Shown here in pieces: positions 13-55,977 of a DNA stretch of 64,000 bases. A program made the translations under genes and the position numbers. The stretch spans positions 186,001-250,000 of IMG/VR virus record IMGVR_UViG_3300027759_004177. One strand, 5' to 3'. The notes under the pieces are model-generated. The model did no database searches. It saw only the letters and a list, made by a program, of their open reading frames with translations, and was not told where the DNA came from. Numbering within the stretch: the first letter of the stretch is position 1; the number at the start of each line of letters is the position of its first letter.

Positions 13-1308
13 TTAATATCCAATACGTCGGAGAAAGTGTTTATATCTTGGTGCATAATCTAGTATCGTGTTGTTCCTGATTGTTTCAAAACTTTTTAAG
101 AAACTGACTAATTCTTTCAGTGATTCCTCTGCATCTGCAGGCGGGGTGTATGTTTTAACAAACTCCAGGTACTCAGTGGCCAACTGTGCAATAATCTCGT
201 GACTTAAATCACTTCTGCGAGTATTCACTTGCGGAGTATACGATCCTAATCGATCAACCACAGCCTGTAACTTTGCAACGGTTTCTTGTCTGATATCGTC
301 TGGCATCAGTTCCATACGCAAACAACGTGGTTGGTGCAATATGTTACAGCTCTCGGCGATAATGTTGTGTTCGATCATGAACTCAAAAACTTGGTCCAGT
401 TCGCTGATAGTAAACAAGTTAGGAGTGATACGTAGTTCTAGTTTTAATCCGGGATTACGATCACGCAAGGCCACAAACTTGAGAATGTTTGCCAAGATCT
501 GATCAGTAGGTCCTGGATAACGCACATAATCGTTTAATGACGTAACTGACTCTATACTGATACCTAGATGAAACTCTTGGAATCTAGGTATCAATTGTTC
601 TATACGTTCATCGTATATTGTGCCGTTGGTAGTTGTGCCAACTATTAGATCTTGTCCATCCAAGTGCTCGCAAATGTCGTAGAAGGCTTGATTATATAAT
701 GTTTCTCCACCCAGGAAGTGTATGTAACGTATGTATGGAAACGATTTTAACTCTGCAACAAAGCGATTGACTGTTGCTGAATCTTCAGTCCAAGACTGAT
801 ACGGCTTGGGTTCAGCAAATAATCGACTATCCAGCTTGTTTAATTTTTTATAGTCTGCAACAAGACGTGAGCTTGCTGTGGGGTCGCACATGATACAGGC
901 ACTATTACAAGTATTACCTAGGTCTATTTGTAAATCTGTTGGAAAATGTGGGCTGGCACCCGCATGACTGTTGCTGTATTCAAATACAGGCAAGTGTGGG
1001 CTAGAACGAAAGGTTAATGGAAACTCTGCAAGACCAATAGCACTTTTGTTTAGTTGTCTAACACGACCCGAAAGTTTTCCAAACTGATCTTGGTAGTAAC
1101 AAGGCTCACACTCTTTGGGTTTGTTGCCGGCTAATAGTTGTTGACGCAGGTCTCTCATGGGCCCACTGTTGTAAAAATCCATCAGCGAAGTTGTGCGTAT
1201 GTTGAAGGCGGTAGCACCGTTTTTGCTCCAGCGACACACATCATAACTACCATCGTAAGTTAATCTAATGTGGAACCAGGGACTTGAACAGAATGAGTCT
1301 TTTAACAT
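13..1308 (-). CDS. Radical SAM protein with N-terminal SPASM/twitch-like Cys cluster
   Basis: CxxxCxxC (CNSACIMC), GGE motif (FLGGETL), N-terminal CSSPW...C...CEPC. Confidence 0.85.
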   Translation of the reverse strand: MLKDSFCSSPWFHIRLTYDGSYDVCRWSKNGATAFNIRTTSLMDFYNSGPMRDLRQQLLAGNKPKECEPCYYQDQFGKLSGRVRQLNKSAIGLAEFPLTFRSSPHLPVFEYSNSHAGASPHFPTDLQIDLGNTCNSACIMCDPTASSRLVADYKKLNKLDSRLFAEPKPYQSWTEDSATVNRFVAELKSFPYIRYIHFLGGETLYNQAFYDICEHLDGQDLIVGTTTNGTIYDERIEQLIPRFQEFHLGISIESVTSLNDYVRYPGPTDQILANILKFVALRDRNPGLKLELRITPNLFTISELDQVFEFMIEHNIIAESCNILHQPRCLRMELMPDDIRQETVAKLQAVVDRLGSYTPQVNTRRSDLSHEIIAQLATEYLEFVKTYTPPADAEESLKELVSFLKSFETIRNNTILDYAPRYKHFLRRIGY

Positions 1309-1315
1309 AATTATA

Positions 1316-1405
1316 TGGCGGAGAGTGTGAGATTCGAACTCACGATAGTGTTGCCACTATGCCGGTTTAGTAGACCGGTGCCTTCAGCCGCTCGGCCAAC
1401 TCTCC
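1316..1405 (-). tRNA. tRNA-Ser with anticodon ACT (A34)
   Basis: Reverse complement GGAGAGTTGGCCGAGCGGCTGAAGGCACCGGT-CTACTAA-ACCGGCATAGTGGCAACACTATCGTGAGTTCGAATCTCACACTCTCCGCCA; long variable arm, G73, encoded CCA. Confidence 0.9.
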
Positions 1406-1432: not shown

Positions 1433-1708
1433 ATGAAAAAATTAATATTTCTATTGGCAACATTCTTTTGTGTTTCTGCCATGGCTTTTACTACTCAAAA
1501 ACCTGTTGACTGTTTTGGAACACCTGAAGTTACCAAAATGCTACGAGAAGAATTCAACGAAGTCATCATATTTGACAGTATCAACAACCTGACCGGCAAA
1601 AGCAGAATTTCTTTGTTTGTAAATTCTAAAACTGGAACATGGACCTTGGTTGAATACGACAACGACAATGCCTGCATTTTAGGTGCTGGTCAAAGTCGTT
1701 CCACCTGA
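1433..1708 (+). CDS. Small secreted/periplasmic hypothetical protein
   Basis: Signal peptide MKKLIFLLATFFCVSAMA, two further Cys; TAAATA at 1407-1412 upstream. Confidence 0.7.
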   Translation: MKKLIFLLATFFCVSAMAFTTQKPVDCFGTPEVTKMLREEFNEVIIFDSINNLTGKSRISLFVNSKTGTWTLVEYDNDNACILGAGQSRST

Positions 1709-2130
1709 CTGACTTCCACGCCCGACTTAGTTAAAAAATCAACGCCGGTGGTATCTCTGTAGGCTGTGCCAAACCACACCCGAGCTATACCACTTTGATA
1801 TATCAGTTTGGCACAGTCTAAGCAAGGGCTGTGAGTAACAAATAGATCAGCACCATGCCCAGACTCATTGCTACGTGCCAGTTTTGCAATAGCATTTGTT
1901 TCAGCATGGAGAACTTCTGGTTTGGTTTTAAGTTCATGATGTCCATCCTCTCTAAGTTCTATTATTTCTTCGCAGTCATTGTCCCAACCGGCGGGCATGC
2001 CATTATAACCAATACTGATGATCCTATCATCCTTGACCACAATAGCACCCACATGCAATCTACGAGCGTGACTGAGTTCAGCAAATGTTCTTGCTGTTTG
2101 CATGTAGGCTTGTACTAACTTGTCTTTCAT
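1690..2130 (-). CDS. dCMP deaminase (cytidine/deoxycytidylate deaminase family)
   Basis: VGAIVV...IISIGYNG, HAE and PCxxC (SPCLDC) zinc motifs. Confidence 0.9.
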   Translation of the reverse strand: MKDKLVQAYMQTARTFAELSHARRLHVGAIVVKDDRIISIGYNGMPAGWDNDCEEIIELREDGHHELKTKPEVLHAETNAIAKLARSNESGHGADLFVTHSPCLDCAKLIYQSGIARVWFGTAYRDTTGVDFLTKSGVEVSQVERL

Positions 2131-2345
2131 TTTACCTTGGCCAGATAATCGACTACATTTAAGTGGCCTTTTTGTGCTTCCAACAATGCGTCCACTGCTG
2201 TGACATGAGCTCCGGATTCTCTAGCACGGATTTTAAGTTCACGCACCCGCTGGGCGGCTGCAACAACTAGGTCAAACCGGCCAACACCTGTTTTGTCAAT
2301 ACATTTTTCAACATCTACTTCTGATGCACGAGTTTCTTTTCTCAT
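2127..2345 (-). CDS. rpoZ: RNA polymerase omega subunit homologue
   Basis: RFDLVVAAAQRVREL...ALLEAQKG matches the omega signature RFDLVLxAAxRARQ...ALxEIxxG; 72 aa. Confidence 0.75.
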   Translation of the reverse strand: MRKETRASEVDVEKCIDKTGVGRFDLVVAAAQRVRELKIRARESGAHVTAVDALLEAQKGHLNVVDYLAKVK

Positions 2346-2353
2346 TTTTTGCC

Positions 2354-3433
2354 TTAGTTTAAAAAATAATCATTTAGAATGGTTGTGTCTACTTTAAAGT
2401 TCTCTTTTATTATAACACGTTTATCTATATCTTGCAAGATCTTTATCAGATTACCGTAAGCTGAGTTAGCCACTTTTTGGAAGTGTAGTCTATTATGGTA
2501 GCTTGGTGCAGGATTGCCTGCTGTGAGCAAACTCTTAACTAGATGGTCTGCACGTTCTTGTGGATATGGTACACTATCGTAGGTTTCATCTATAGTATCG
2601 CCGAAGGTTTCAAATCCTAACTCTCGGATCTTGGCCAGGCTATGTTGTCCACCGTAGACCACAAACGGGTGACCTAGCATTAGACTCTTGTAGGTCTTTT
2701 CGGTTGGGAACCATTCGTTCTGTGTGGTTTCACTGGCTATGCTTATCGTGGTATTGTAGTAGTGACTAGGATAGTAGGCATAGAAACGAAAGTCCGGATG
2801 TACAAATGGATCAGGCCAATCTTGATCTGGTCCAAAGCCGTCTGCACTTTTACCTGACCTATGACTCCATATACTGGCATCAAGTAGCCCGGCTGTTTTA
2901 AATAATTCAAAGAATCGTTCTCTATTGGTGCGCCATTCTCCATTTAAGAACAGGAACCGGTGCGTCTTTACTGCTGTGTCAATTTGATTGCATGTGTACT
3001 CTAATCTGGCACGATTAAACTCATTGTTGATAATCCACGCAAAGAACTCGGGCATGTTATAGTTCTTTGCATAACCGTCAATATCCCAATCGCCACACTT
3101 GATTAAGTATCCATCAATATTTTTTGCTTGCAGTTGCTCTGCGGTTGGGCAAAAACTTGCCGATAAGGTTGCATAGCTTTCACTTGGATAATAAAATACA
3201 ATCTTGTTGTTGTGTCCTGCGGCACGATCAATTATGGCTTGAGCAATATCGTGTCCGGGATCACCACAGGCTGTCTCCATAACAAAGCAGTCTGTGACAA
3301 TGGTAGCACCGTCAGGTATTGCACTCACATCAGACTCCACGTAATCCACACCGTGCAGAGACAGAGTAGCACGTAATAAATCCGCTTGTTTTTCGGCTGG
3401 ACGTTTGAGTGGATGTAATATTAGATATAACAT
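2354..3433 (-). CDS. Glycosyltransferase-like protein (SET/TEKT family)
   Basis: SET...TEKTYKSLMLGHPFVVYG...LGFETF...DETYD, shared with 27914 and 29642 ORFs; resembles GT10-like C-terminal motif. Confidence 0.55.
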   Translation of the reverse strand: MLYLILHPLKRPAEKQADLLRATLSLHGVDYVESDVSAIPDGATIVTDCFVMETACGDPGHDIAQAIIDRAAGHNNKIVFYYPSESYATLSASFCPTAEQLQAKNIDGYLIKCGDWDIDGYAKNYNMPEFFAWIINNEFNRARLEYTCNQIDTAVKTHRFLFLNGEWRTNRERFFELFKTAGLLDASIWSHRSGKSADGFGPDQDWPDPFVHPDFRFYAYYPSHYYNTTISIASETTQNEWFPTEKTYKSLMLGHPFVVYGGQHSLAKIRELGFETFGDTIDETYDSVPYPQERADHLVKSLLTAGNPAPSYHNRLHFQKVANSAYGNLIKILQDIDKRVIIKENFKVDTTILNDYFLN

Positions 3434-3482: not shown

Positions 3483-4112
3483 ATGAAAAATCTTGTCTAC
3501 TATCCAGATTTGCCCTCAATTCCTGAACACCTGTTGGTTGATGTTGAAAAAATAGTGTTAGAACGTATTGCCAATGATCCGCCACATCCAAATCCGTTGT
3601 GTCAAAGAGAAATGGCTGTTTCTCGCGGTGAAGAAAAAATTGTAGGTGGGCGATATCGCGGAGACGAAGCAGATGAACCACTACAATCTTGGGTTAGAGA
3701 AAATATTGGTGATGATCTAGCACCAAAAGCACGAGTACGGATTGCCAGCCACGGGGAACAAGGAAATTTAAGTGTTCCACACAGTGATGCTTCTAGAGAT
3801 TGGAGTCTGTTATATCTTGTCAATTTAGGTGGTGACAACGTGGAAACAATTTTTTGGCAAGAAAAAAATCAACCAGTGAGACGACCAAATGCAACTTTTC
3901 CTCCTAGCTATGATGATTTGATTGAACTAGAACGTGTGACATTCCCTAGTCATACTTGGGTCATGCTTGACTCATTGGTTTTACACAGCATAGAAAACAT
4001 GGAAAGTTTGCGTATAGCAGTACAGGTAGGATTCAAAGACGGTAGCACAACTCTACAAAAAATTTGGCCTGAAAGAGATTGGACTCAGCTAGAAATTCCC
4101 AGCTCTAATTGA
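3483..4112 (+). CDS. Putative Fe(II)/2-oxoglutarate oxygenase-like (DSBH) protein
   Basis: HxD (PHSD)...distal H (LHSIEN)...R (LRIAVQV) facial-triad pattern. Confidence 0.5.
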   Translation: MKNLVYYPDLPSIPEHLLVDVEKIVLERIANDPPHPNPLCQREMAVSRGEEKIVGGRYRGDEADEPLQSWVRENIGDDLAPKARVRIASHGEQGNLSVPHSDASRDWSLLYLVNLGGDNVETIFWQEKNQPVRRPNATFPPSYDDLIELERVTFPSHTWVMLDSLVLHSIENMESLRIAVQVGFKDGSTTLQKIWPERDWTQLEIPSSN

Positions 4113-5058
4113 TTTTTTGACCAATTGGTAACCAGGTGTTTCTCAAACGTTCTATGTGTTGATTAAATCCTGCGGTGGTTGCTTCGTCTGGGTTGGAAAA
4201 AATAAAATTTTCATTGTTAAATCTTTTTACTTCGTCAGTTTCTAATGCCCGGCTAAACTTTGTTTGATACCAAGCCACAATCTCAGGTGCTGTATCCGGC
4301 GGCAACATCAGTGCCCATGCTGCAAAAATATCAATACCCTTTCCATTGATCTTCAATGTTTCCACTGCCGGTAACTTGGCCAATCTTTTTTCTCCTGTGA
4401 TAGCAATAATTTTTACTTTGCCTGCTTCTACCAATGGGCGGGCAACACTGATTGGCATGATGCCAAACTCAATGTTGGATTCTGACGCCACTCCAGTTAC
4501 TGCCTGTAGCGGTCCTTGAAAGTTTACATGGCCGACTAAATTTTTATTTGCGCCACTGTTGAGCATAATATATTCAAATGCTAGGCGATGTACTGGACTA
4601 CCCACTGCAACATTAACTGGTTTTCCAGGACTTTTTATATATGATAAAAATTCAACAGGTGTATTTACACGACTACCGGGGTGTGCCACTATCGCTAATG
4701 GACTTTTTGCCATGCCCATCACATTGGTAAAACTGTTGTATTCCCATCGTTTTAGATCTTTTTGGAAGATATCGTTACCTACGTAGGTTGCAAAATAGCT
4801 GGGAACACTGATGGTGTATCCATCAGGTGCAGCTTCATACAATGCATTGCTGGCCAACACAGTATCTGCACCAGGTTTATGTTCTATCACGTATTGAAAG
4901 GTTGGATGATTTTTCTGTACTTGTGTGGCCAACAATCGAAACTGAACTTCGTTGCCACTGCCGGGAGCGAATCCAATTATTACTCTCACAGGTCTGGTAG
5001 GTTCCCATGCCCAGGCCATGAGAGGAGCCATAAGCAAAACAAACAATAATTTTTTCAT
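4105..5058 (-). CDS. Tripartite tricarboxylate transporter (Bug/TctC) substrate-binding protein
   Basis: Signal peptide; PTRPVRVIIGFAPGSGNE, VIEHKPGA, APDGYTI, LPPDTAPEIV. Confidence 0.9.
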   Translation of the reverse strand: MKKLLFVLLMAPLMAWAWEPTRPVRVIIGFAPGSGNEVQFRLLATQVQKNHPTFQYVIEHKPGADTVLASNALYEAAPDGYTISVPSYFATYVGNDIFQKDLKRWEYNSFTNVMGMAKSPLAIVAHPGSRVNTPVEFLSYIKSPGKPVNVAVGSPVHRLAFEYIMLNSGANKNLVGHVNFQGPLQAVTGVASESNIEFGIMPISVARPLVEAGKVKIIAITGEKRLAKLPAVETLKINGKGIDIFAAWALMLPPDTAPEIVAWYQTKFSRALETDEVKRFNNENFIFSNPDEATTAGFNQHIERLRNTWLPIGQKIN

Positions 5059-9462: not shown

Positions 9463-9538
9463 TGGTGCCCTGGGTAGGATTCGAACCCACAATGTCCGCT
9501 CGGTAAAGCGGTGACTATACCATTTTGTCTACCAGGGT
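9463..9538 (-). tRNA. tRNA-like gene, undetermined identity (6-nt anticodon loop TTACCG, A1/C72 mismatch)
   Basis: ACCCTGG acceptor, D arm, CCGCT/AGCGG stem, GTTCGAATC T-loop, CCA end. Confidence 0.75.
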
Positions 9539-9540
9539 GT

Positions 9541-9615
9541 TGGTTGCGGGGGACAGATTCGAACTGTCGATCTCCAGGTTATGAGCCTGACGGGTTGCCT
9601 CTTCCCTACCCCGCG
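9541..9615 (-). tRNA. tRNA-fMet (CAT), initiator type
   Basis: CGCGGGG...CCCCGCA-A-CCA with C1/A72 mismatch; loop CTCATAA. Confidence 0.9.
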
Positions 9616-9618
9616 ATA

Positions 9619-10221
9619 TTACATTGTAGGACCGTTGCCGTTCCTAAATCCAATACTTCCACCCTCTGCTTCAATCCGTTTGATAACATCTTCGAACAAG
9701 ATAGGTGCAAAATCTGTCTGTTCCACGCATACGCAATGATAACGGACATCAATCCATTGCCTTACTCCGCGGGTCATAAACTCGTGTGTGGTTTGTGCTG
9801 TTTTCATCACGCGATTAGCATGGAGGTGACCGTGGATGTTGACACCAAAACGACCCAGGCTTTCCTCATGGATAGGGATATGACTGAGTATCATTCCGTT
9901 CATCACATGGTAAGCACGCAGTTCACGAAAGTGTTCACGATAGTCGGTATCCCGGAAGATGTCGTGATTACCGCGGATAAGAACTTTGTCACCGTTGAGC
10001 CTACGCATAATAGCAAGACTCTTACGGCTCATAACTACATCACCCAAGTGGTAAACTTTATCGTTGGGACGTACACGTTCGTTCCAACGCTCAACCATGG
10101 CTTCGTCCATTTCGTCTGCTGAGTCCCAAGGACGAAGTTTTGTTACACCATCGTTACGGACAAAGCGACATACACCTGCATGACCAAAGTGCGTGTCGCT
10201 GACTAAAAATACTGCTGGCAT
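9619..10221 (-). CDS. Calcineurin-like metallophosphoesterase
   Basis: SDTHFGH, HLGD, RGNHD, SHIP, HGHLH motifs; SD GGAGG. Confidence 0.9.
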   Translation of the reverse strand: MPAVFLVSDTHFGHAGVCRFVRNDGVTKLRPWDSADEMDEAMVERWNERVRPNDKVYHLGDVVMSRKSLAIMRRLNGDKVLIRGNHDIFRDTDYREHFRELRAYHVMNGMILSHIPIHEESLGRFGVNIHGHLHANRVMKTAQTTHEFMTRGVRQWIDVRYHCVCVEQTDFAPILFEDVIKRIEAEGGSIGFRNGNGPTM

Positions 10222-10246
10222 ACGTGCCTCCTTTCTTTTCTAAACA

Positions 10247-10320
10247 TGGCGCCGGTCCAGGGAATCGAACCCCGATCAGCGGTTTTGGAGACCGCTGTAA
10301 TGCCATTATACCAGACCGAC
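10247..10320 (-). tRNA. tRNA-Trp (CCA)
   Basis: Anticodon loop CTCCAAA, full cloverleaf, CCA end. Confidence 0.92.
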
Positions 10321-10321
10321 C

Positions 10322-10399
10322 TGGAAGTGAGGGTCGGATTTGAACCGACGGGGTTAGGGATTTGCAGTCCCTTGCATTGGGCCACTCTGCCACCTCACT
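10322..10399 (-). tRNA. tRNA-Cys (GCA)
   Basis: Loop CTGCAAA, U73, CCA end. Confidence 0.92.
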
Positions 10400-10407
10400 G
10401 CTGTTAC

Positions 10408-10481
10408 TGGAGCGGGATATCGGAATCGAACCGATGACGAAAGATTGGAAATCTTTAGTTTTGCCCCTAAACTAATCCCGC
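10408..10481 (-). tRNA. tRNA-Gly (TCC)
   Basis: GCGGGA acceptor, loop TTTCCAA, U73, CCA. Confidence 0.92.
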
Positions 10482-10490
10482 ATTATAATC

Positions 10491-10566
10491 TGGCGCTCCC
10501 GACCGGATTCGAACCGGTGTACTCGCCGTGAAAGGGCGATGTCCTAGGCCTCTAGACGACGGGAGC
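10491..10566 (-). tRNA. tRNA-Glu (TTC)
   Basis: Loop CTTTCAC, cloverleaf, CCA. Confidence 0.92.
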
Positions 10567-10572
10567 CTAACT

Positions 10573-10656
10573 TGGTGGAGAACACTGGGATCGAACCAGT
10601 CGTGCCATAGGCGCCGGATTTACAGTCCAGTGCATCACCATTGATGCTTCTTCTCC
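10573..10656 (-). tRNA. tRNA-Tyr (GTA)
   Basis: Loop CTGTAAA, long variable arm, CCA. Confidence 0.92.
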
Positions 10657-10662
10657 AAAACT

Positions 10663-10739
10663 TGGCGGAGTAGACGGGACTCGAACCCGCGACCCTCGGC
10701 GTGACAGGCCGATATTCTAACCAACTGAACTACCACTCC
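10663..10739 (-). tRNA. tRNA-Asp (GTC)
   Basis: GGAG acceptor, loop CTGTCAC, CCA. Confidence 0.92.
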
Positions 10740-11532: not shown

Positions 11533-12021
11533 TTAAGCCTTTTTAATCTTGTCAATCAAACCAGGTGAAAATGTTGGTTCAAACTTTTCATAAACTGCTT
11601 GAGCTTTATGTTTCCACTCAGCTGTTTCTTCTTTGGAAAGTTCAATAACATCAATACCATCAGCAACCAATTGCTGTTTGGCATCTTCACCATCCTGGAT
11701 CGTGACTTCACGTTCTCTACGTCCTGCTTTGATAGCAGCATCCTTGATCACGGCTTGAACCTCGGGACTCAATGTCTTCCAGAAGTCGTCACGCATGATC
11801 ATGGTTGTCAAAAACAAACTGTGCTTTGAGTCAATCACGCTTTTGGTAACGTCATTCTGCTTCAAGGGATAGATACGACTGTAAACAGTTTCTCCACCTT
11901 CGCAATCACCTTCGATGATGTGGGCACGAGTGTCTTCGGTTTCACAAACAAACACGTCGACACCACCCAAGACCTTGAATGTTTCTTGTGCCACTGGATT
12001 ACGATTGGTTCTTAGCTTCAT
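11533..12021 (-). CDS. TRAP substrate-binding protein (DctP-like), C-terminal half
   Basis: MKLR...ETFKVLGG, H-S-L-F, FWKTLSPEVQAVIKDAA, LVADGIDVIELSKEE typical of DctP C-terminus. Confidence 0.8.
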   Translation of the reverse strand: MKLRTNRNPVAQETFKVLGGVDVFVCETEDTRAHIIEGDCEGGETVYSRIYPLKQNDVTKSVIDSKHSLFLTTMIMRDDFWKTLSPEVQAVIKDAAIKAGRREREVTIQDGEDAKQQLVADGIDVIELSKEETAEWKHKAQAVYEKFEPTFSPGLIDKIKKA

Positions 12022-12488
12022 TTCTTGCCTAGATCATCTAGACCAGAGACTGGCTTGTCAACAATAATGTTACGGAAACCGCCTGAGTAAGTGAATGCCA
12101 TACCGCGAACATTGGACTTTTCAGTGATCTTCTCTAATAGACCTTCGCCAACTTCACCTTCTAGCACACGGGTTGCATGGTCGTGATCTTCAAAAATAAA
12201 TGGCATTTCTAGGGCTAACATATCGTGCTCAATATCTTCGGCCAACCATGTGGTGTACATTTGGCTCATTTCAATCTTGCCTTGTTCCATTAGATCTAGC
12301 AAATCGTGTTTAGTAACCAACACACCGTCGTTGTACTTCATGCTGTACTCGCTTAGTGTCATAACTTCAACTTCGATCTTTTCTGCACTTTGAGCTTCGT
12401 TTACAAAACGCTGAAAGTCTTCTGCTGCACGTACAAATAGGCTTAGTGGCTCGTGAGCAATTACCCAACGAATTTTAGTAGTTTTCAT
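12018..12488 (-). CDS. TRAP substrate-binding protein (DctP-like), N-terminal half, no signal peptide
   Basis: LEMPFIFEDHDHATRVLEGEVG, SGGFRNI, DDL; SD AAGGA before ATG 12488; ATGA overlap with the C-terminal half. Confidence 0.8.
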   Translation of the reverse strand: MKTTKIRWVIAHEPLSLFVRAAEDFQRFVNEAQSAEKIEVEVMTLSEYSMKYNDGVLVTKHDLLDLMEQGKIEMSQMYTTWLAEDIEHDMLALEMPFIFEDHDHATRVLEGEVGEGLLEKITEKSNVRGMAFTYSGGFRNIIVDKPVSGLDDLGKK

Positions 12489-12513
12489 GTGTATTTCCTT
12501 TATAATTTTTTTG

Positions 12514-12592
12514 GCGGCGTTCCGGTGTAACACACCGGTAAAAGGGTTTGCTACCCTAGGCGTCTGACGTCAACTGAATGTCGGCGTTGCTA
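12514..12592 (-). ncRNA. Candidate structured cis-regulatory leader RNA
   Basis: Between TAAATA (12597-12602) and SD: hairpins AGGGT-AGCAA-ACCCT and CCGGTGT-GTT-ACACCGG, ACGCC three times. Confidence 0.4.
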
Positions 12593-12612: not shown

Positions 12613-13527
12613 TTATTTGTCCAGTTTAACTGTAGCACTCAAACGGCGCCATAACACCAGCTGACTGTTGTACCAGTTGTCTAGCTCAGAATCTGGAATT
12701 TGATTGTTAGGAATACAAGTATCTGCGGCATTGGCATCACGTACACTTTTGCTACGTGCAGCTTCTACAAAAATCTTGCGAATTTCACGAAACTTTTCTT
12801 CAGGAAATTTGCGTGGAATAAAGATCTGTTGCGAGCTACTCATGTCTGCAATTGCCGGTGCAAATCCTTGATTTTTCAACAAGGGAATACCTTTAATACT
12901 TTCTTTGCCGGTCATGCCCAACCAATAAACCCGTTTGGTAGCGTCTGGCTTTGTGTACTGCTCGCTATCGCCAATGAATCCCACAGCAAAATCAGTTTGC
13001 CCACCCAAGACATTTAACAATGCTTCGTTGGTGCTTTTAAACGGAACAATCTGCATGTTTGGATATTGTGCAGCCACTTGCAAGGCTACCAGGTGCGTGG
13101 TTGCCCCAAGTCCACTGATACCAATGTTTAACTTGGCGTTTCGAGGAACATCCTTCCATGTTTTATACTTTGTGCTTGTGATAACAAACGGTGCAATACA
13201 CATGGGCATTAGGCTTCTAAAGTCGGCCATGTTATGACTTTCCGTTGGAAACAGGTTGGGACGGATAAATCCTGCCGAACTGTTGATCCAGATTGAGTTG
13301 GGAGTGTTTAACACATGGTTGGCTGCAACTGTGCCACCAGCACCAGGTTTGGCATCAAATACAAATGTGTATTTGCTTTGAAGTTTGTTGCTTTCATCAG
13401 CAAGTGTGCGATAGAAGTTTGCTGCTGTGTCTGCTGGCGACCAAGAATAAAACATAGTTACTGTTTCTTTCTGCGCCATGGCAGATAAACTGACCATGGT
13501 TAATAGTGTGGCTAATAATCGTTTCAT
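12613..13527 (-). CDS. Tripartite tricarboxylate transporter (Bug/TctC) substrate-binding protein
   Basis: Signal peptide; KPGAGGTVAANHV, SGLGATTHL, VPFKS...VLGGQTD. Confidence 0.88.
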   Translation of the reverse strand: MKRLLATLLTMVSLSAMAQKETVTMFYSWSPADTAANFYRTLADESNKLQSKYTFVFDAKPGAGGTVAANHVLNTPNSIWINSSAGFIRPNLFPTESHNMADFRSLMPMCIAPFVITSTKYKTWKDVPRNAKLNIGISGLGATTHLVALQVAAQYPNMQIVPFKSTNEALLNVLGGQTDFAVGFIGDSEQYTKPDATKRVYWLGMTGKESIKGIPLLKNQGFAPAIADMSSSQQIFIPRKFPEEKFREIRKIFVEAARSKSVRDANAADTCIPNNQIPDSELDNWYNSQLVLWRRLSATVKLDK

Positions 13528-53847: not shown

Positions 53848-55977
53848 TTAATATCTCCCTACTGCTATTTCGATAGTTGTTATATCATTGCCGTCATAGT
53901 CTTCAAGACTTTTTGCAATTATACAACCTGGTTCATATTTTGTTTTGTCTAAACGTTCTGCTACACCTGGAATATTGCTGGTAACCAGTCTATCGCCTTT
54001 GGCTACTGGTCCACGCACCTGACATGGTACACGGCCTGTGAGTGCCACTGGCAAGCCAGGTTTGGCAGCATTCATCAGGTATGCTGGATCGGTGCTTACT
54101 ACTCCAGCTGTTCGCGGATCGTGGCTAACGTCTGTGGTTGTTATTTCTGCGGATCCACCAAACACAACTACTGTGCCTGGAGCATATTCCGCATCAGCCA
54201 CATAGTGTTCTGCTAGGTCAGCATACTTGGCTTGGACGCTGACACCGTACACGTTGTTCCACCAAGCTGTGGTGGATCCAAGATTGACGGCCAAATTAGA
54301 TGATGGTACAACAAAACCAGATACTGTGATGTTAGCACAGGTCACTGCACCCAATGATGTGGCGCCGGTTACTGTTATGCCTGAAGAAAATGTGTTGGCC
54401 TGTGATGCCACAAAACCGCTGGTGTCAACCCACTGGGAGCCAGTGCCATCATATAGGTATTGGAATACAGTATCACTGGCGCTGTCATACCAGGTGTCGC
54501 CAGAATATGGATTGGCTGGTGATGTGGTTCCTGTAAAGTTTGTGACTAATGGTCTAGTATTACGGAATGCTCCACTACCTACGTTGAGGTTTCCTGTGAT
54601 TGCAGCTCCACCAGACACCTGCAATGCACCGGTAACGTTGCTGGTACTGGCTGTGGTATTGGATAGCACCAAGCTACCAAAAATCACATTGCCACGTGTG
54701 CCAGAGTTGACGCCTCCAGAAGTTTCAGTGGCATCTGCCAGATATTCCAATGCTCCTGTGGAATTTTCCCATCCCAGGAACGCATGTTTGTCTGCACCTT
54801 TGTAGTAGTGGAATCGAACACCGATGTCACGACCATCATCTGACGACAATGCTGCCAAATTGGCAAATGTGTGTAATTCAATAACTGAGTCAGTGACCGT
54901 CAAGTTGTTGGAACCAATGGTCACTGTGTTACCCAGCACAGTCAAGTTTCCTTGAACTGTCAGCCCGCTTGCATTCCATCCACCAGCTTTGGTTGTTGCT
55001 GTACCGGCAAGATTTTCTACGTAAAATTCTAATTCACCGTTGCTGGCGCCTGCACTGGTTTCTGCCAGAATATAAGTGAATCCGTCAACTGATTTGACTC
55101 CACCCAACGAACTCCATGCACCCGATGCATAGCCTTCAAAACTGCTGATAGTGGTATTGTATCGAACCATACCTAACGCAGGACCACTTGGTCGTTGTGC
55201 GGTATTGCCCACTGGCAAGGTCAAGTAGTTGTAACTGTTGGCACTCATTACTATGTTGCCAAGTACGTACACGTTACCGCCAACACCCACACCGGCTGCT
55301 ACAGTCAATGCTCCTGTACCAGGGCTGGTACTGGTTGTGTTTCCATTGATACCAATACTGGATAAACCTGTGATTGAGGCAGTATTGCCGCCCAAGGCCA
55401 CTGTGGTGTTACCAAATCTTACGTCAGCTGTGGCCCAACTTGGTGCATATCCTGCACCTTCTGAACGCAAGAATGTACCAATTGCACCTGCTGTAATGAA
55501 AGTGGTCACGTTGGTGTCTTGCTGAATCATCAACTGACCAGCTGATCCGCCTGTAATGTTTGTGGCACTGGTTGCTGTGGTAGCTGTACCAACAGTCAGT
55601 GCTGAACCTGAAACCCAGGTTGGTGAACTAGTACCACCCGAAATAAGAAATTGTCCAGCTGTACCTGCTAGACTTAGGCCCAGTCCAGTTGCAGTACTGT
55701 AAGGGACGGCCCCTGCGGCAGCAGTTAATACACTACCAGTTCCGCCATAGGCCAATGCCACAGCATTACCTTGCCAGAATGATCCACTACTAAAAGTTTT
55801 GTTTAATACAGTTTGTGTAGCACCTGTGGTTAATACTGTGGCGCCGCCGCCTGCTGTAGTTCCGTCGTGTAAACGTAGGGTTTTGGCGTCAGTATCGTAG
55901 GTAATTTCACCGGCGGCACCAGTAAAAGCGTTGTTTTGTGTTGTAGTTCCTCGTCTAAACTGTACTTGGGTTGCCAT
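53848..55977 (-). CDS. Tail fibre protein (Mtd-N-like N-terminus, C-terminal IMC chaperone)
   Basis: QVQFRRGTT..N..FTGAAGEITYDTD..LRLHDG; Gly/Thr-rich shaft; ADLAEHY. Confidence 0.8.
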   Translation of the reverse strand: MATQVQFRRGTTTQNNAFTGAAGEITYDTDAKTLRLHDGTTAGGGATVLTTGATQTVLNKTFSSGSFWQGNAVALAYGGTGSVLTAAAGAVPYSTATGLGLSLAGTAGQFLISGGTSSPTWVSGSALTVGTATTATSATNITGGSAGQLMIQQDTNVTTFITAGAIGTFLRSEGAGYAPSWATADVRFGNTTVALGGNTASITGLSSIGINGNTTSTSPGTGALTVAAGVGVGGNVYVLGNIVMSANSYNYLTLPVGNTAQRPSGPALGMVRYNTTISSFEGYASGAWSSLGGVKSVDGFTYILAETSAGASNGELEFYVENLAGTATTKAGGWNASGLTVQGNLTVLGNTVTIGSNNLTVTDSVIELHTFANLAALSSDDGRDIGVRFHYYKGADKHAFLGWENSTGALEYLADATETSGGVNSGTRGNVIFGSLVLSNTTASTSNVTGALQVSGGAAITGNLNVGSGAFRNTRPLVTNFTGTTSPANPYSGDTWYDSASDTVFQYLYDGTGSQWVDTSGFVASQANTFSSGITVTGATSLGAVTCANITVSGFVVPSSNLAVNLGSTTAWWNNVYGVSVQAKYADLAEHYVADAEYAPGTVVVFGGSAEITTTDVSHDPRTAGVVSTDPAYLMNAAKPGLPVALTGRVPCQVRGPVAKGDRLVTSNIPGVAERLDKTKYEPGCIIAKSLEDYDGNDITTIEIAVGRY

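What the first reader, a model, noticed from the sequence alone, without database searches (positions are those of the whole stretch)
2127..2345. Phage-encoded RNAP omega subunit lacking the ppGpp-binding N-terminus
Seen: omega core motif RFDLVVAAAQRVREL. Established: in proteobacterial RNAP the omega N-terminal MAR residues form part of ppGpp site 1. By eye MARVTV aligns to ASEVDV here (Arg replaced by Glu) behind a short extension. Inference: replacing host omega could blunt the stringent response and keep stable-RNA-type promoters, such as the phage tRNA promoters, active. That would fit with the attenuator and tRNA set.
Basis: partly seen in the sequence, partly recalled or inferred. Interest (0 to 1): 0.62.

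Follow-up and report, generated by a model that had tools for sequence, protein, structure and literature searches.

The report
Phage-encoded omega subunit for host RNA polymerase
A 357-kb freshwater phage that has no RNA polymerase of its own encodes a small omega-like subunit, one of a large, so far undescribed viral family usually embedded in phage tRNA gene arrays, whose altered N-terminus sits where the host enzyme binds the starvation signal ppGpp.

Summary
Window 2127..2345 (-) is an intact 72-aa gene under purifying selection (dN/dS 0.07-0.24). It is a diverged RpoZ/omega homologue. Alone it scores below the curated cut-offs (Pfam 20.4/26 bits; TIGR00690 21.5/23.6). A profile of its family hits solved proteobacterial omegas at E 2e-11. 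The fold model matches 27 omega chains (Z 4.5-7.1), and a co-fold places it on the omega site of E. coli beta' (0.75; best control 0.01).

The genome is a complete phage with no detectable beta, beta' or sigma-70 gene, so the target should be host RNA polymerase.

The N-terminus is replaced, not missing. About 200 viral clusters share a 6-9-residue extension carrying a conserved Ser-Arg. In 38 of 44 viral loci the gene lies within 100 nt of a same-strand tRNA gene. No cultured phage, PHROG or paper found carries it.

Loss of ppGpp site-1 control is the most likely mechanism, but it is inferred, not shown. The conserved Arg6 might substitute for Arg3, and DksA-dependent site 2 would remain.

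The parts
2127..2345 (-). Phage omega-like (RpoZ/Rpb6-fold) gene, 72 aa (P0001). Residues 1-8 are the viral N-terminal extension with conserved Thr5-Arg6. Residues 9-13 correspond to canonical omega residues 3-7. Residues 22-37 are the conserved GRFDL...R.REL core.
   Evidence: homology; fold; dN/dS 0.07-0.24; co-fold with beta'; the only such gene in the genome.
2352..2355 (-). Shine-Dalgarno-like AAGG 7 nt upstream of the ATG, overlapping the stop codon of the upstream ORF.
   Evidence: The same AAGG/GGAG placement is seen in all 44 related loci.
2127..2130 (-). ATGA overlap of the omega stop codon with the dCMP deaminase start codon, which suggests translational coupling within one operon.
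1690..2130 (-). dCMP deaminase gene, immediately downstream in the same operon. It is also a neighbour of the omega-like gene in 12 related viral loci.
   Evidence: (phrog_174, E 3e-52).
2354..3433 (-). 359-aa ORF of unknown function, immediately upstream on the same strand with an 8-nt gap. It is syntenic in the 359-kb relative L008.
   Evidence: no Pfam or PHROG match.
1316..1405 (-). tRNA-Ser gene, 722 nt downstream of omega on the same strand. It is the nearest tRNA. In closer relatives L005 and L006 tRNA genes abut the omega gene at 6-31 nt.
9463..10739 (-). Main tRNA array of the window (7 tRNA genes) with a metallophosphoesterase gene inside it (9619..10221). In relatives this is the module in which the omega-like gene is normally embedded.
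   Evidence: metallophosphoesterase 75% identical to the one in L051.

Best explanation
The gene encodes a virus-specific omega subunit. The phage has no detectable polymerase of its own, so the protein most likely docks on the host beta' subunit at the canonical omega site, replacing or out-competing host omega, mainly on newly assembled enzyme.

Its conserved core keeps the beta' contacts. Its N-terminus rebuilds the omega half of the beta'-omega pocket, which in proteobacteria is ppGpp site 1. Where canonical omega offers Ala2, Arg3 and Thr5 to the ppGpp 5'-diphosphate, the viral family offers small, acidic or neutral residues (Ser8, Glu/Gln9, Asp11) plus an extra segment (Thr5-Ser8) lying against beta' R362, R417 and K615.

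The most likely consequence is that polymerase carrying the phage omega stops responding to ppGpp through site 1. That would mean less ppGpp-induced pausing and slowing, and partial relief at stable-RNA-type promoters. Phage transcription, including the tRNA arrays with which the gene is normally co-located, would then continue when infection or starvation raises ppGpp.

Shown: homology, fold, conservation, residue substitutions, tRNA linkage, and absence of detectable phage beta/beta'.

Inferred: binding to host beta' (in-silico support only), loss of ppGpp binding, and the physiological benefit.
For: Homology:
- Family profiles hit only solved omegas at the top: A2 gives E 2.9e-5 and A3 gives E 2.3e-11.
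- Proteobacterial omegas score best. Firmicute omegas are weaker (E 5e-6 to 4e-5), and no omega of any other group reached E 0.001.
- 67 of 87 members hit PF01192.

Fold:
- The AF2 model has pLDDT 89.4.
- The 27 best VIA-align rows are all omega, with Z 4.5-7.1, rmsd 2.0-4.0 A and 53-66 residues aligned. The next row drops to Z 3.0.

Docking:
- ipSAE is 0.75 in three runs against a best control of 0.01. That mark was reached by 51 of 78 solved complexes and 2 of 108 mismatched pairs.
- The runs agree in at least 89% of contacts, and partner pLDDT is at least 76.
- The confident interface holds beta' 362, 417-420, 613-615, 474-488, 910-912 and 1360-1364, and omega 5-8, 10-13 and 22-54.

No phage polymerase: there is no PF04997, PF00562 or PF04542 match in the complete genome.

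Site-1 chemistry: omega residues 2-5, with Ala2 and Arg3, together with beta' R417 and K615, hold the ppGpp phosphates. Eliminating site 1 abolishes ppGpp-stimulated pausing (PMC7676912; PMC13192712).

Substitutions: the Arg3 position is E27/Q18/L11/D8 among 87 members, and the Thr5 position is D74/N11.

Selection: dN/dS is 0.07-0.24. The N-terminal residues T5, R6, D11, E13 and C15 are invariant among 25 close relatives.

tRNA linkage: 38 of 44 loci have a same-strand tRNA within 100 nt.

Host clue: the phage carries a beta-type permuted tmRNA, and the MAR motif is reported to be conserved in Betaproteobacteria (PMC6912228).
Against: - No experiment or direct measurement bears on ppGpp.
- The invariant Arg6 lies only three residues from the Arg3 position. 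Several structural alignments start at model residue 5-6 against omega residue 1-2, so it might replace Arg3 and preserve the site.
- In E. coli, site 2 (DksA) dominates initiation control, and a rpoZ deletion gives only a modest phenotype.
- An RNAP with omega residues 2-5 deleted plus three beta' substitutions still bound ppGpp only about 2-fold worse.
- The co-fold used E. coli beta' as a stand-in and may pass from memory of solved RNAP structures.
- The host is unknown.
- No RNA-library contig covers the gene itself.
- The phage-versus-host omega exchange rate on assembled enzyme is unknown.
Confidence: 0.4

Rival explanations
1. Docking handle. The phage omega binds host beta' normally, but its purpose is to present a virus-specific surface (the N-terminal Ser-Arg motif, the ALLE.Q helix, the short C-terminus). 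Through that surface a phage regulator, or a phage-directed modification, recognises 'converted' polymerase and steers it to phage promoters.
For: - Omega is a known regulator contact: the RcGTA activator GafA acts through direct interaction with omega (PMC9638019 abstract).
- The viral family has its own conserved surface motifs that differ from canonical omega.
- The phage has no recognisable sigma-70 region 2, so it needs some other way to redirect the host enzyme.
Against: - No partner has been identified.
- The conserved neighbours are enzymes (a Cys-phosphatase, a metallophosphoesterase, dCMP deaminase), not obvious transcription factors.
- The most conserved viral-specific residues are modelled against beta', not exposed to solvent.
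Confidence: 0.2
2. Dosage or assembly helper. The phage simply supplies more omega to chaperone beta' folding and stabilise core enzyme when host gene expression is shut off. The N-terminal differences would be neutral or would only tune affinity.
For: - Omega's established role is as a beta' folding and assembly chaperone (PMC5811629 and PMC7700224 abstracts).
- The conserved core and the predicted interface are the canonical ones.
Against: - The viral N-terminal motif is the most strongly conserved part across clusters that are only 30-40% identical. That argues for a specific function, not drift.
- A plain dosage gene would be expected to resemble host omega, including MAR. Canonical MAR-type omegas instead appear only at the bottom of the profile hit list.
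Confidence: 0.2
3. Site 1 is kept or re-tuned. The invariant Arg6, with Ser5, takes over the role of Arg3, so the phage omega preserves alarmone binding. It might even raise the affinity or change the ligand, for example to another nucleotide signal. Phage transcription would then stay coupled to host nutritional state.
For: - Arg6 is present in 114 of 148 representative clusters, as part of [ST]R-x3-[IVL][DN].
- Some structural alignments place model residues 5-6 on omega residues 1-2.
- Residues 5-8 are in the confident interface together with beta' R362, R417 and K615.
Against: - The positions homologous to Arg3 and Thr5 are acidic or neutral, with a near-invariant Asp at the Thr5 position. 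That should repel phosphates.
- The extension adds bulk where the ligand sits.
Confidence: 0.15
4. Not an RNA polymerase subunit in practice. It would be a small helical protein of omega ancestry recruited to another job, for instance in tRNA processing or repair, which would explain its place in tRNA arrays.
For: - The tight physical linkage to tRNA genes, a metallophosphoesterase and a Cys-phosphatase.
- The single protein is below the curated RpoZ cut-offs.
Against: - The beta'-contacting core is conserved.
- The co-fold passes with wide margins over its controls.
- All top fold and profile hits are omega.
Confidence: 0.05

Closest known systems
Bacterial RNA polymerase omega subunit (RpoZ; PF01192 RNA_pol_Rpb6, TIGR00690), proteobacterial type such as E. 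coli or V. cholerae omega
   Same: - Same fold: helices corresponding to alpha1-alpha4, Z up to 7.1.
- Same core motifs: G-N/G-R-F-D-L-V...A-x-R-A/V-R-E and A-L-x-E-I/A.
- Same predicted seat on beta', including the contacts with residues 474-488, 910-912 and the C-terminal 1360-1364.
   Different: - It is encoded by a virus that lacks beta and beta'.
- It has no M-A-R N-terminus. Instead there is a 6-9-residue extension with a conserved Ser/Thr-Arg.
- It has Glu/Gln and Asp at the Arg3 and Thr5 positions.
- The loop between alpha2 and alpha3 is shorter, and there is no C-terminal tail (72 aa against 91).
- Its genomic context is phage tRNA arrays, not gmk-rpoZ-spoT.
Rpb6/RpoK homologues of archaea, eukaryotes and large eukaryotic DNA viruses
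   Same: Same Pfam family, and in the viral cases also a virus-encoded copy (own knowledge for the eukaryotic viruses).
   Different: Those viral copies, from own knowledge, serve a virus-encoded multisubunit polymerase. Here no viral large subunits are detectable. The sequence is closest to proteobacterial omega, not to Rpb6.
Phage proteins that reprogram host RNA polymerase (T4 gp55/gp33/AsiA, T7 Gp2, Xp10 P7, P23-45 gp39)
   Same: The predicted logic is the same: a small phage protein binds host core enzyme and changes its regulation. P7 and gp39 complexes with RNAP are solved (one search lists 6j9e/6j9f; PMC3950348).
   Different: Those are non-homologous add-on factors or sigma-like proteins. 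This one is a homologue of a core subunit and would act by subunit replacement.
Phage interference with the stringent response (phage MazG, HD alarmone phosphodiesterases of jumbo phages)
   Same: - Same proposed target pathway.
- This phage also has a MazG-like ORF.
- Jumbo phages with HD-alarmone phosphodiesterases are described (PMC7824862).
   Different: Those act on the nucleotide pool. This would act at the receptor site on RNAP. No omega is mentioned in that jumbo-phage survey.
GafA-omega interaction controlling the gene transfer agent RcGTA
   Same: Omega is used as the regulatory entry point for a virus-like element (PMC9638019).
   Different: There the host omega is contacted by an element-encoded activator. 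Here the element encodes the omega itself.

Membership tests
RpoZ / RNA_pol_Rpb6 (bacterial omega subunit) | Sequence homology to the family profile | tested here: met
   The single protein is sub-threshold: PF01192 20.4 bits (cut-off 26) and TIGR00690 21.5 bits (cut-off 23.6). Family profiles settle it. A2 against PDB omegas gives E 2.9e-5, and A3 gives E 2.3e-11 with the top 23 hits all omega. 67 of 87 relatives hit PF01192 at E <= 1e-3.
RpoZ / RNA_pol_Rpb6 (bacterial omega subunit) | Score above the curated gathering or trusted cut-off for this individual protein | tested here: not met
   (20.1-21.5 bits, below 23.6 and 26). This is an operational threshold, not a biological feature. It is reported so that the divergence is clear.
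RpoZ / RNA_pol_Rpb6 (bacterial omega subunit) | Omega fold (short N-terminal segment, alpha1, long alpha2, alpha3, alpha4) | tested here: met
   The AF2 model has pLDDT 89.4, with helices at 12-19, 23-44, 50-58 and 64-69. Foldseek top hits are all omega (probability up to 0.96, TM 0.55-0.65), though the E-values are weak at 0.38 or more. In VIA-align the 27 best rows are all omega (Z 4.5-7.1, rmsd 2.0-4.0 A, 53-66 aligned), and the next row has Z 3.0.
RpoZ / RNA_pol_Rpb6 (bacterial omega subunit) | Binds beta' at conserved regions D and G and the C-terminal tail | tested here: inconclusive
   The co-fold with E. coli beta' 340-935 plus 1131-1407 gave ipSAE 0.75 against a best control of 0.01. 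That mark was reached by 51 of 78 solved complexes and 2 of 108 mismatched pairs. Contacts agree at 89% or more between runs, and partner pLDDT is at least 76. The interface includes beta' 474-488, 910-912 and 1360-1364. This is in-silico only, uses a stand-in beta', and may pass from memory of solved complexes.
RpoZ / RNA_pol_Rpb6 (bacterial omega subunit) | Is a stoichiometric component of core RNA polymerase and promotes its assembly | not testable with these tools
   This needs co-purification or reconstitution.
Proteobacterial ppGpp-site-1-competent omega ('MAR' type) | N-terminal Met-Ala-Arg, with residues 2-5 contacting the ppGpp phosphates (PMC6912228, PMC7676912, PMC13192712) | tested here: not met
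   The aligned residues are Ala7-Ser8-Glu9, behind a 6-residue extension. Family-wide the Arg3 position is E/Q/L/D and the Thr5 position is D/N. The invariant Arg6 upstream leaves functional substitution open.
Omega/Rpb6 subunit of a virus-encoded multisubunit RNA polymerase | Virus also encodes beta/beta'-like large subunits | tested here: not met
   PF04997 and PF00562 give no match at E <= 10 in the complete 357-kb genome, while the controls ring in 14 of 14 genomes. Very divergent phiKZ-like subunits could escape these Pfam models.

The most novel reading that the evidence does not exclude
A large, virus-specific branch of the omega family, carried inside phage tRNA operons, converts host RNA polymerase into an alarmone-blind (or alarmone-retuned) enzyme by subunit replacement. 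Its conserved Ser-Arg...Asp N-terminus would occupy or neutralise ppGpp site 1 as a built-in pseudo-ligand. That would free phage tRNA and long-operon transcription from stringent control. It would be the first case of a phage replacing a core subunit of the host polymerase.
Probability: 0.25. Interest if true: 0.85.

Novelty: new variant of a known kind. Interest (0 to 1): 0.66.

Why it matters
Phages are known to redirect host RNA polymerase with sigma-like factors, inhibitors and covalent modification. I found no report of a phage supplying its own version of a core subunit.

This family is large: about 200 clusters at 50% identity, mostly viral. It is seen in freshwater metagenomes from 11 studies. 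It is tied to phage tRNA arrays and is altered exactly at the residues that form the omega half of ppGpp site 1.

If it removes or retunes that site, it gives three things:
- a natural separation-of-function omega for studying site 1, whose role in pausing and elongation is only now being defined;
- a mechanism by which tRNA-rich large phages keep transcription going in starved or stringent hosts;
- a compact tool for making RNAP insensitive to ppGpp at site 1.

If it turns out to be only a chaperone copy, it is still a new class of auxiliary phage gene.

Tried and rejected
Searches that found nothing:
- tblastn of P0001 and of three diverse relatives against 50,697 phage records gave no phage hit. 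The only hits were mislabelled bacterial contigs with gmk-rpoZ-spoT.
- PHROGs gave no family for P0001 or for 10 relatives.
- Two genome-contig scans, with omega profile A2 and with the TctC protein, found no relative. No bacterial handle could therefore be obtained, and host or bacterial-genome surveys were not possible.

Searches that failed for technical reasons:
I replaced it with a DNA pattern for IDTEKCV.
- The look-up of encoding contigs for three distant clusters gave only contigs of 3.4 kb or less.

Expression:
- RNA-library contigs lie on the neighbouring deaminase and on the 359-aa ORF but not on omega. They could also be DNA carry-over, so there is no evidence either way.

Promoters and terminators:
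- The scan found no more sites than shuffled sequence, so no promoter is claimed.

Hypotheses considered and rejected:
- Omega belongs to a phage-encoded RNAP. No beta or beta' was found.
- The ORF is a chance or decaying frame. dN/dS is 0.07-0.24, and the gene is intact in an independent DNA run.
- A second omega copy sits in the tRNA array of this genome. There is none.

Other stringent-response genes in the genome:
- DksA/TraR and RelA/SpoT domains were not found.
- Only a weak MazG match was found.

Full report
**1. What is at the coordinates**

Window 2127..2345 on the minus strand is an ATG-to-TGA ORF of 72 codons (P0001). An AAGG lies 7 nt before the ATG and overlaps the stop of the upstream 359-aa ORF (2354..3433). 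The omega stop overlaps the start of the downstream dCMP deaminase gene (1690..2130) as ATGA. The gene therefore sits in a tight same-strand operon.

**2. The replicon is a phage without its own polymerase**

- The window is bases 186,001-250,000 of a single 356,865-bp virus record rated 100% complete. GC is 42.7%.
- The genome has 11 tRNA genes and a tmRNA. Ten of the tRNAs lie in the window.
- The window also carries a T4-type large terminase, a tail sheath and an Mtd_N-domain protein.
- Pfam models for beta' (PF04997), beta (PF00562) and sigma-70 region 2 (PF04542) find nothing in the genome at E <= 10, while they ring in the control genomes.
- A profile of the omega-like family finds exactly one copy in the genome (E 1.3e-25).
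- The same DNA is held by freshwater metagenome runs from 11 studies. An independent DNA contig covers 1816-2577 with one difference.

**3. Is it omega?**

By itself the protein is sub-threshold:
- PF01192: E 5e-4, 20.4 bits against a cut-off of 26.
- TIGR00690: E 1.8e-4, 21.5 bits against 23.6.
- E. coli omega by phmmer: E 0.006.

Relatives settle the question:
- A word search gave 33 homologues. Of these, 29 are 72 aa long and 75-92% identical, and they lie on contigs up to 359 kb with the same synteny.
- An exhaustive profile search gave 200 clusters at E <= 1e-3, of which 54 are at E <= 1e-10.
- A profile of 87 members hits solved omegas at E 2.3e-11 (V. cholerae) and 7e-11 (E. coli). All 23 hits are omega. 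Proteobacterial enzymes score best, and Firmicutes are weaker at E 5e-6 to 4e-5.
- 67 of the 87 members hit PF01192 individually.
- The AF2 model (pLDDT 89.4) has the omega helices. Foldseek's best rows are omega, although with weak E-values of 0.38 or more.
- In VIA-align the 27 best rows are all omega (Z 4.5-7.1, rmsd 2.0-4.0 A, 53-66 residues). The next row drops to Z 3.0.
- Pairwise dN/dS among five relatives is 0.07-0.24.

I conclude that it is a real, selected, diverged member of the omega family.

**4. The N-terminus**

Canonical M1-A2-R3-V4-T5-V6 corresponds to A7-S8-E9-V10-D11-V12, behind a 6-residue extension.

The N-terminus is not degenerate, however:
- In the close family M1, T5, R6, D11, E13 and C15 are invariant.
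- 114 of 148 representative clusters share [ST]-R-x3-[IVL]-[DN] about six residues from the Met.
- In the 87-member alignment the Arg3 position is E27/Q18/L11/D8, the Thr5 position is D74/N11, and the next-but-one position is E47/D20/Q10. The Ser-Arg columns are invariant in that alignment by construction, because I selected members on that motif.
- Canonical M-A-R omegas appear only at the bottom of the hit list, at E about 1e-5 to 1e-6.
- Structural alignments of the first residues are inconsistent. Model residues 5-9 are matched to omega residues 1-3 in different entries. I therefore cannot exclude that Arg6 reaches where Arg3 sits.

**5. Why that region matters**

[quoted passage not shown] The base is held by beta' R362, I619 and D622 (PMC7676912).
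- A 2026 preprint specifies Ala2 and Arg3 of omega plus Arg417 for the 5'-diphosphate. It also shows that eliminating site 1 abolishes ppGpp-stimulated pausing (PMC13192712).
- The MAR motif is reported to predict site 1 and to be conserved in Alpha-, Beta-, Gamma- and Deltaproteobacteria (PMC6912228).
- Two caveats come from the same literature. Site 2 with DksA has the larger effect on initiation. An RNAP with omega residues 2-5 deleted plus three beta' substitutions still bound ppGpp only about 2-fold worse.

**6. Docking**

I co-folded P0001 with E. coli beta' 340-935 and 1131-1407.
- The score was 0.75 in three runs, against a best control of 0.01. That mark was reached by 51 of 78 solved complexes and 2 of 108 mismatched pairs.
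- The runs agree in at least 89% of contacts, and partner pLDDT is at least 76.
- The confident interface contains the canonical omega seat (beta' 474-488, 910-912, 1360-1364). It also contains beta' 362, 417-420 and 613-615, together with phage residues 5-8 and 10-13.
- The viral extension is therefore modelled against three ppGpp-ligand residues.

Limits: the tool warns that a pass may come from memory of solved RNAPs, E. coli beta' is a stand-in, and no coordinates are returned.

**7. Genomic context across the family**

- A degenerate DNA pattern for IDTEKCV found 39 IMG/VR loci. With the other loci this makes 44 that encode a family member.
- In 38 of the 44, a same-strand tRNA gene lies within 100 nt of the ORF. 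In 22, tRNAs lie within 150 nt on both sides.
- Typical gaps are 14-30 nt upstream and 2-8 nt downstream, inside arrays of up to 32 tRNAs. An AAGG or GGAG lies 6-9 nt before every ATG.
- Several database 'proteins' of the family carry N-terminal extensions that look to me like read-through of an adjacent tRNA gene. I did not check this.
- In this window the deaminase separates omega from tRNA-Ser by 722 nt. In the 76-78% identical relatives L005 and L006, tRNAs abut the gene.
- Other recurrent neighbours are a DSP/PTP-type Cys-phosphatase (28 loci), a metallophosphoesterase (27 loci; window 9619..10221 is 75% identical to the one in L051) and dCMP deaminase (12 loci).
- These loci may largely be one deep viral lineage, so the linkage is partly shared ancestry.

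**8. Is it known?**

- JGI's pipeline labels some members 'subunit K/omega'.
- The nearest ESM-Atlas clusters are 63-96% viral and carry PF01192 in 44-60% of members.
- No PHROG matches.
- No genuine phage record in the 2025 GenBank phage set carries it.
- Four full-text searches and a jumbo-phage comparative survey gave no description of a phage omega.
- Absence from these libraries is not proof that it was never noted.

**9. Host**

The host is not identified. The phage carries a permuted tmRNA that matches the Betaproteobacteria model RF01850 (144.5 bits, E 7.7e-46; tag ANDEQFALAA). It also carries TctC/Bug-type binding proteins. Both fit a betaproteobacterial host, a group where MAR omegas are reported.

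**10. Verdict**

- The omega identity, the substitutions at the ppGpp-contacting positions and the tie to tRNA genes stand.
- 'Lacking the N-terminus' should read 'replaced by a conserved viral N-terminal motif'.
- My best mechanism is subunit replacement on host RNAP that disables ppGpp site 1. I put the omega/beta' docking part at about 0.85 and the ppGpp part at about 0.35, for 0.4 overall.
- The rivals are a regulator docking handle, a plain assembly helper, a retained or retuned site via Arg6, and a non-RNAP role.
- All can be separated by reconstitution, ppGpp-binding and pause assays.

Noticed in passing
G000:C1:71983-72379 (-), outside the window; locus L010 613-1001: The phage encodes a permuted (two-piece) tmRNA with tag ANDEQFALAA. 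It matches Rfam beta_tmRNA RF01850 (144.5 bits, E 7.7e-46) and tmRNA_permuted RF04321. This is a host-lineage clue and an unusual phage gene in its own right.
   Followed up: partly
window 4105..5058 (-), 12613..13527 (-), 11533..12533 (-): The phage carries periplasmic solute-binding proteins. There are two TctC/Bug-family genes. A DctP-family gene is split into two ORFs that overlap by 4 nt: 12018..12533 matches profile positions 11-134 and 11533..12021 matches 138-284. This could be a frameshift or a pseudogene.
   Followed up: no
window 1316..1405 (-) and 9463..9538 (-): ARAGORN calls a tRNA-Ser with anticodon ACT, and a tRNA whose anticodon it cannot assign ('ac', tRNA-???), next to a tRNA-Met.
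   Followed up: no
loci L014-L052 and window 9619..10221 (-): Recurrent module around the viral tRNA arrays: a metallophosphoesterase (27 loci; the window copy is 75% identical to the one in L051), a DSP/PTP-type Cys-phosphatase (28 loci; absent from this genome by tblastn) and a 2OG-Fe(II) oxygenase-like ORF. These might be tRNA repair or modification functions.
   Followed up: partly
loci L005, L006, L013, L014, L025, L028, L031, L039 and others: The omega-like ORF is packed between tRNA genes, with only 14-30 nt upstream and 2-8 nt downstream. Its mRNA would therefore have to be released by tRNA processing (a 'tRNA punctuation' layout).
   Followed up: partly
G000:C1:354229-354378 (-), locus L009: MazG-like ORF in a 113-codon open frame, PF03819 at 23.2 bits, just over the cut-off. 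It is the only other gene found with a possible link to alarmone or nucleotide-pool control. No DksA/TraR or RelA/SpoT domain was found.
   Followed up: no
window 53848..55977 (-): A 709-aa protein with an N-terminal Mtd_N domain (major tropism determinant; E 2.7e-13). Such proteins are targets of diversity-generating retroelements in some phages. I did not look for a template repeat or a reverse transcriptase.
   Followed up: no
phage collection records CAKLQH020000003.1, CAKLQF020000004.1, AFYI01000003.1, AGRM01000003.1: Records filed among phages are bacterial chromosome contigs. gmk-rpoZ-spoT was seen in CAKLQH020000003.1 and AFYI01000003.1, and an annotated rpoZ lies under the match in the other two. 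They give false 'phage rpoZ' hits.
   Followed up: yes
window 13..1308 (-): A radical SAM/SPASM-domain protein of 431 aa, syntenic with the omega operon in the 359-kb relative L008. Its substrate is unknown.
   Followed up: no
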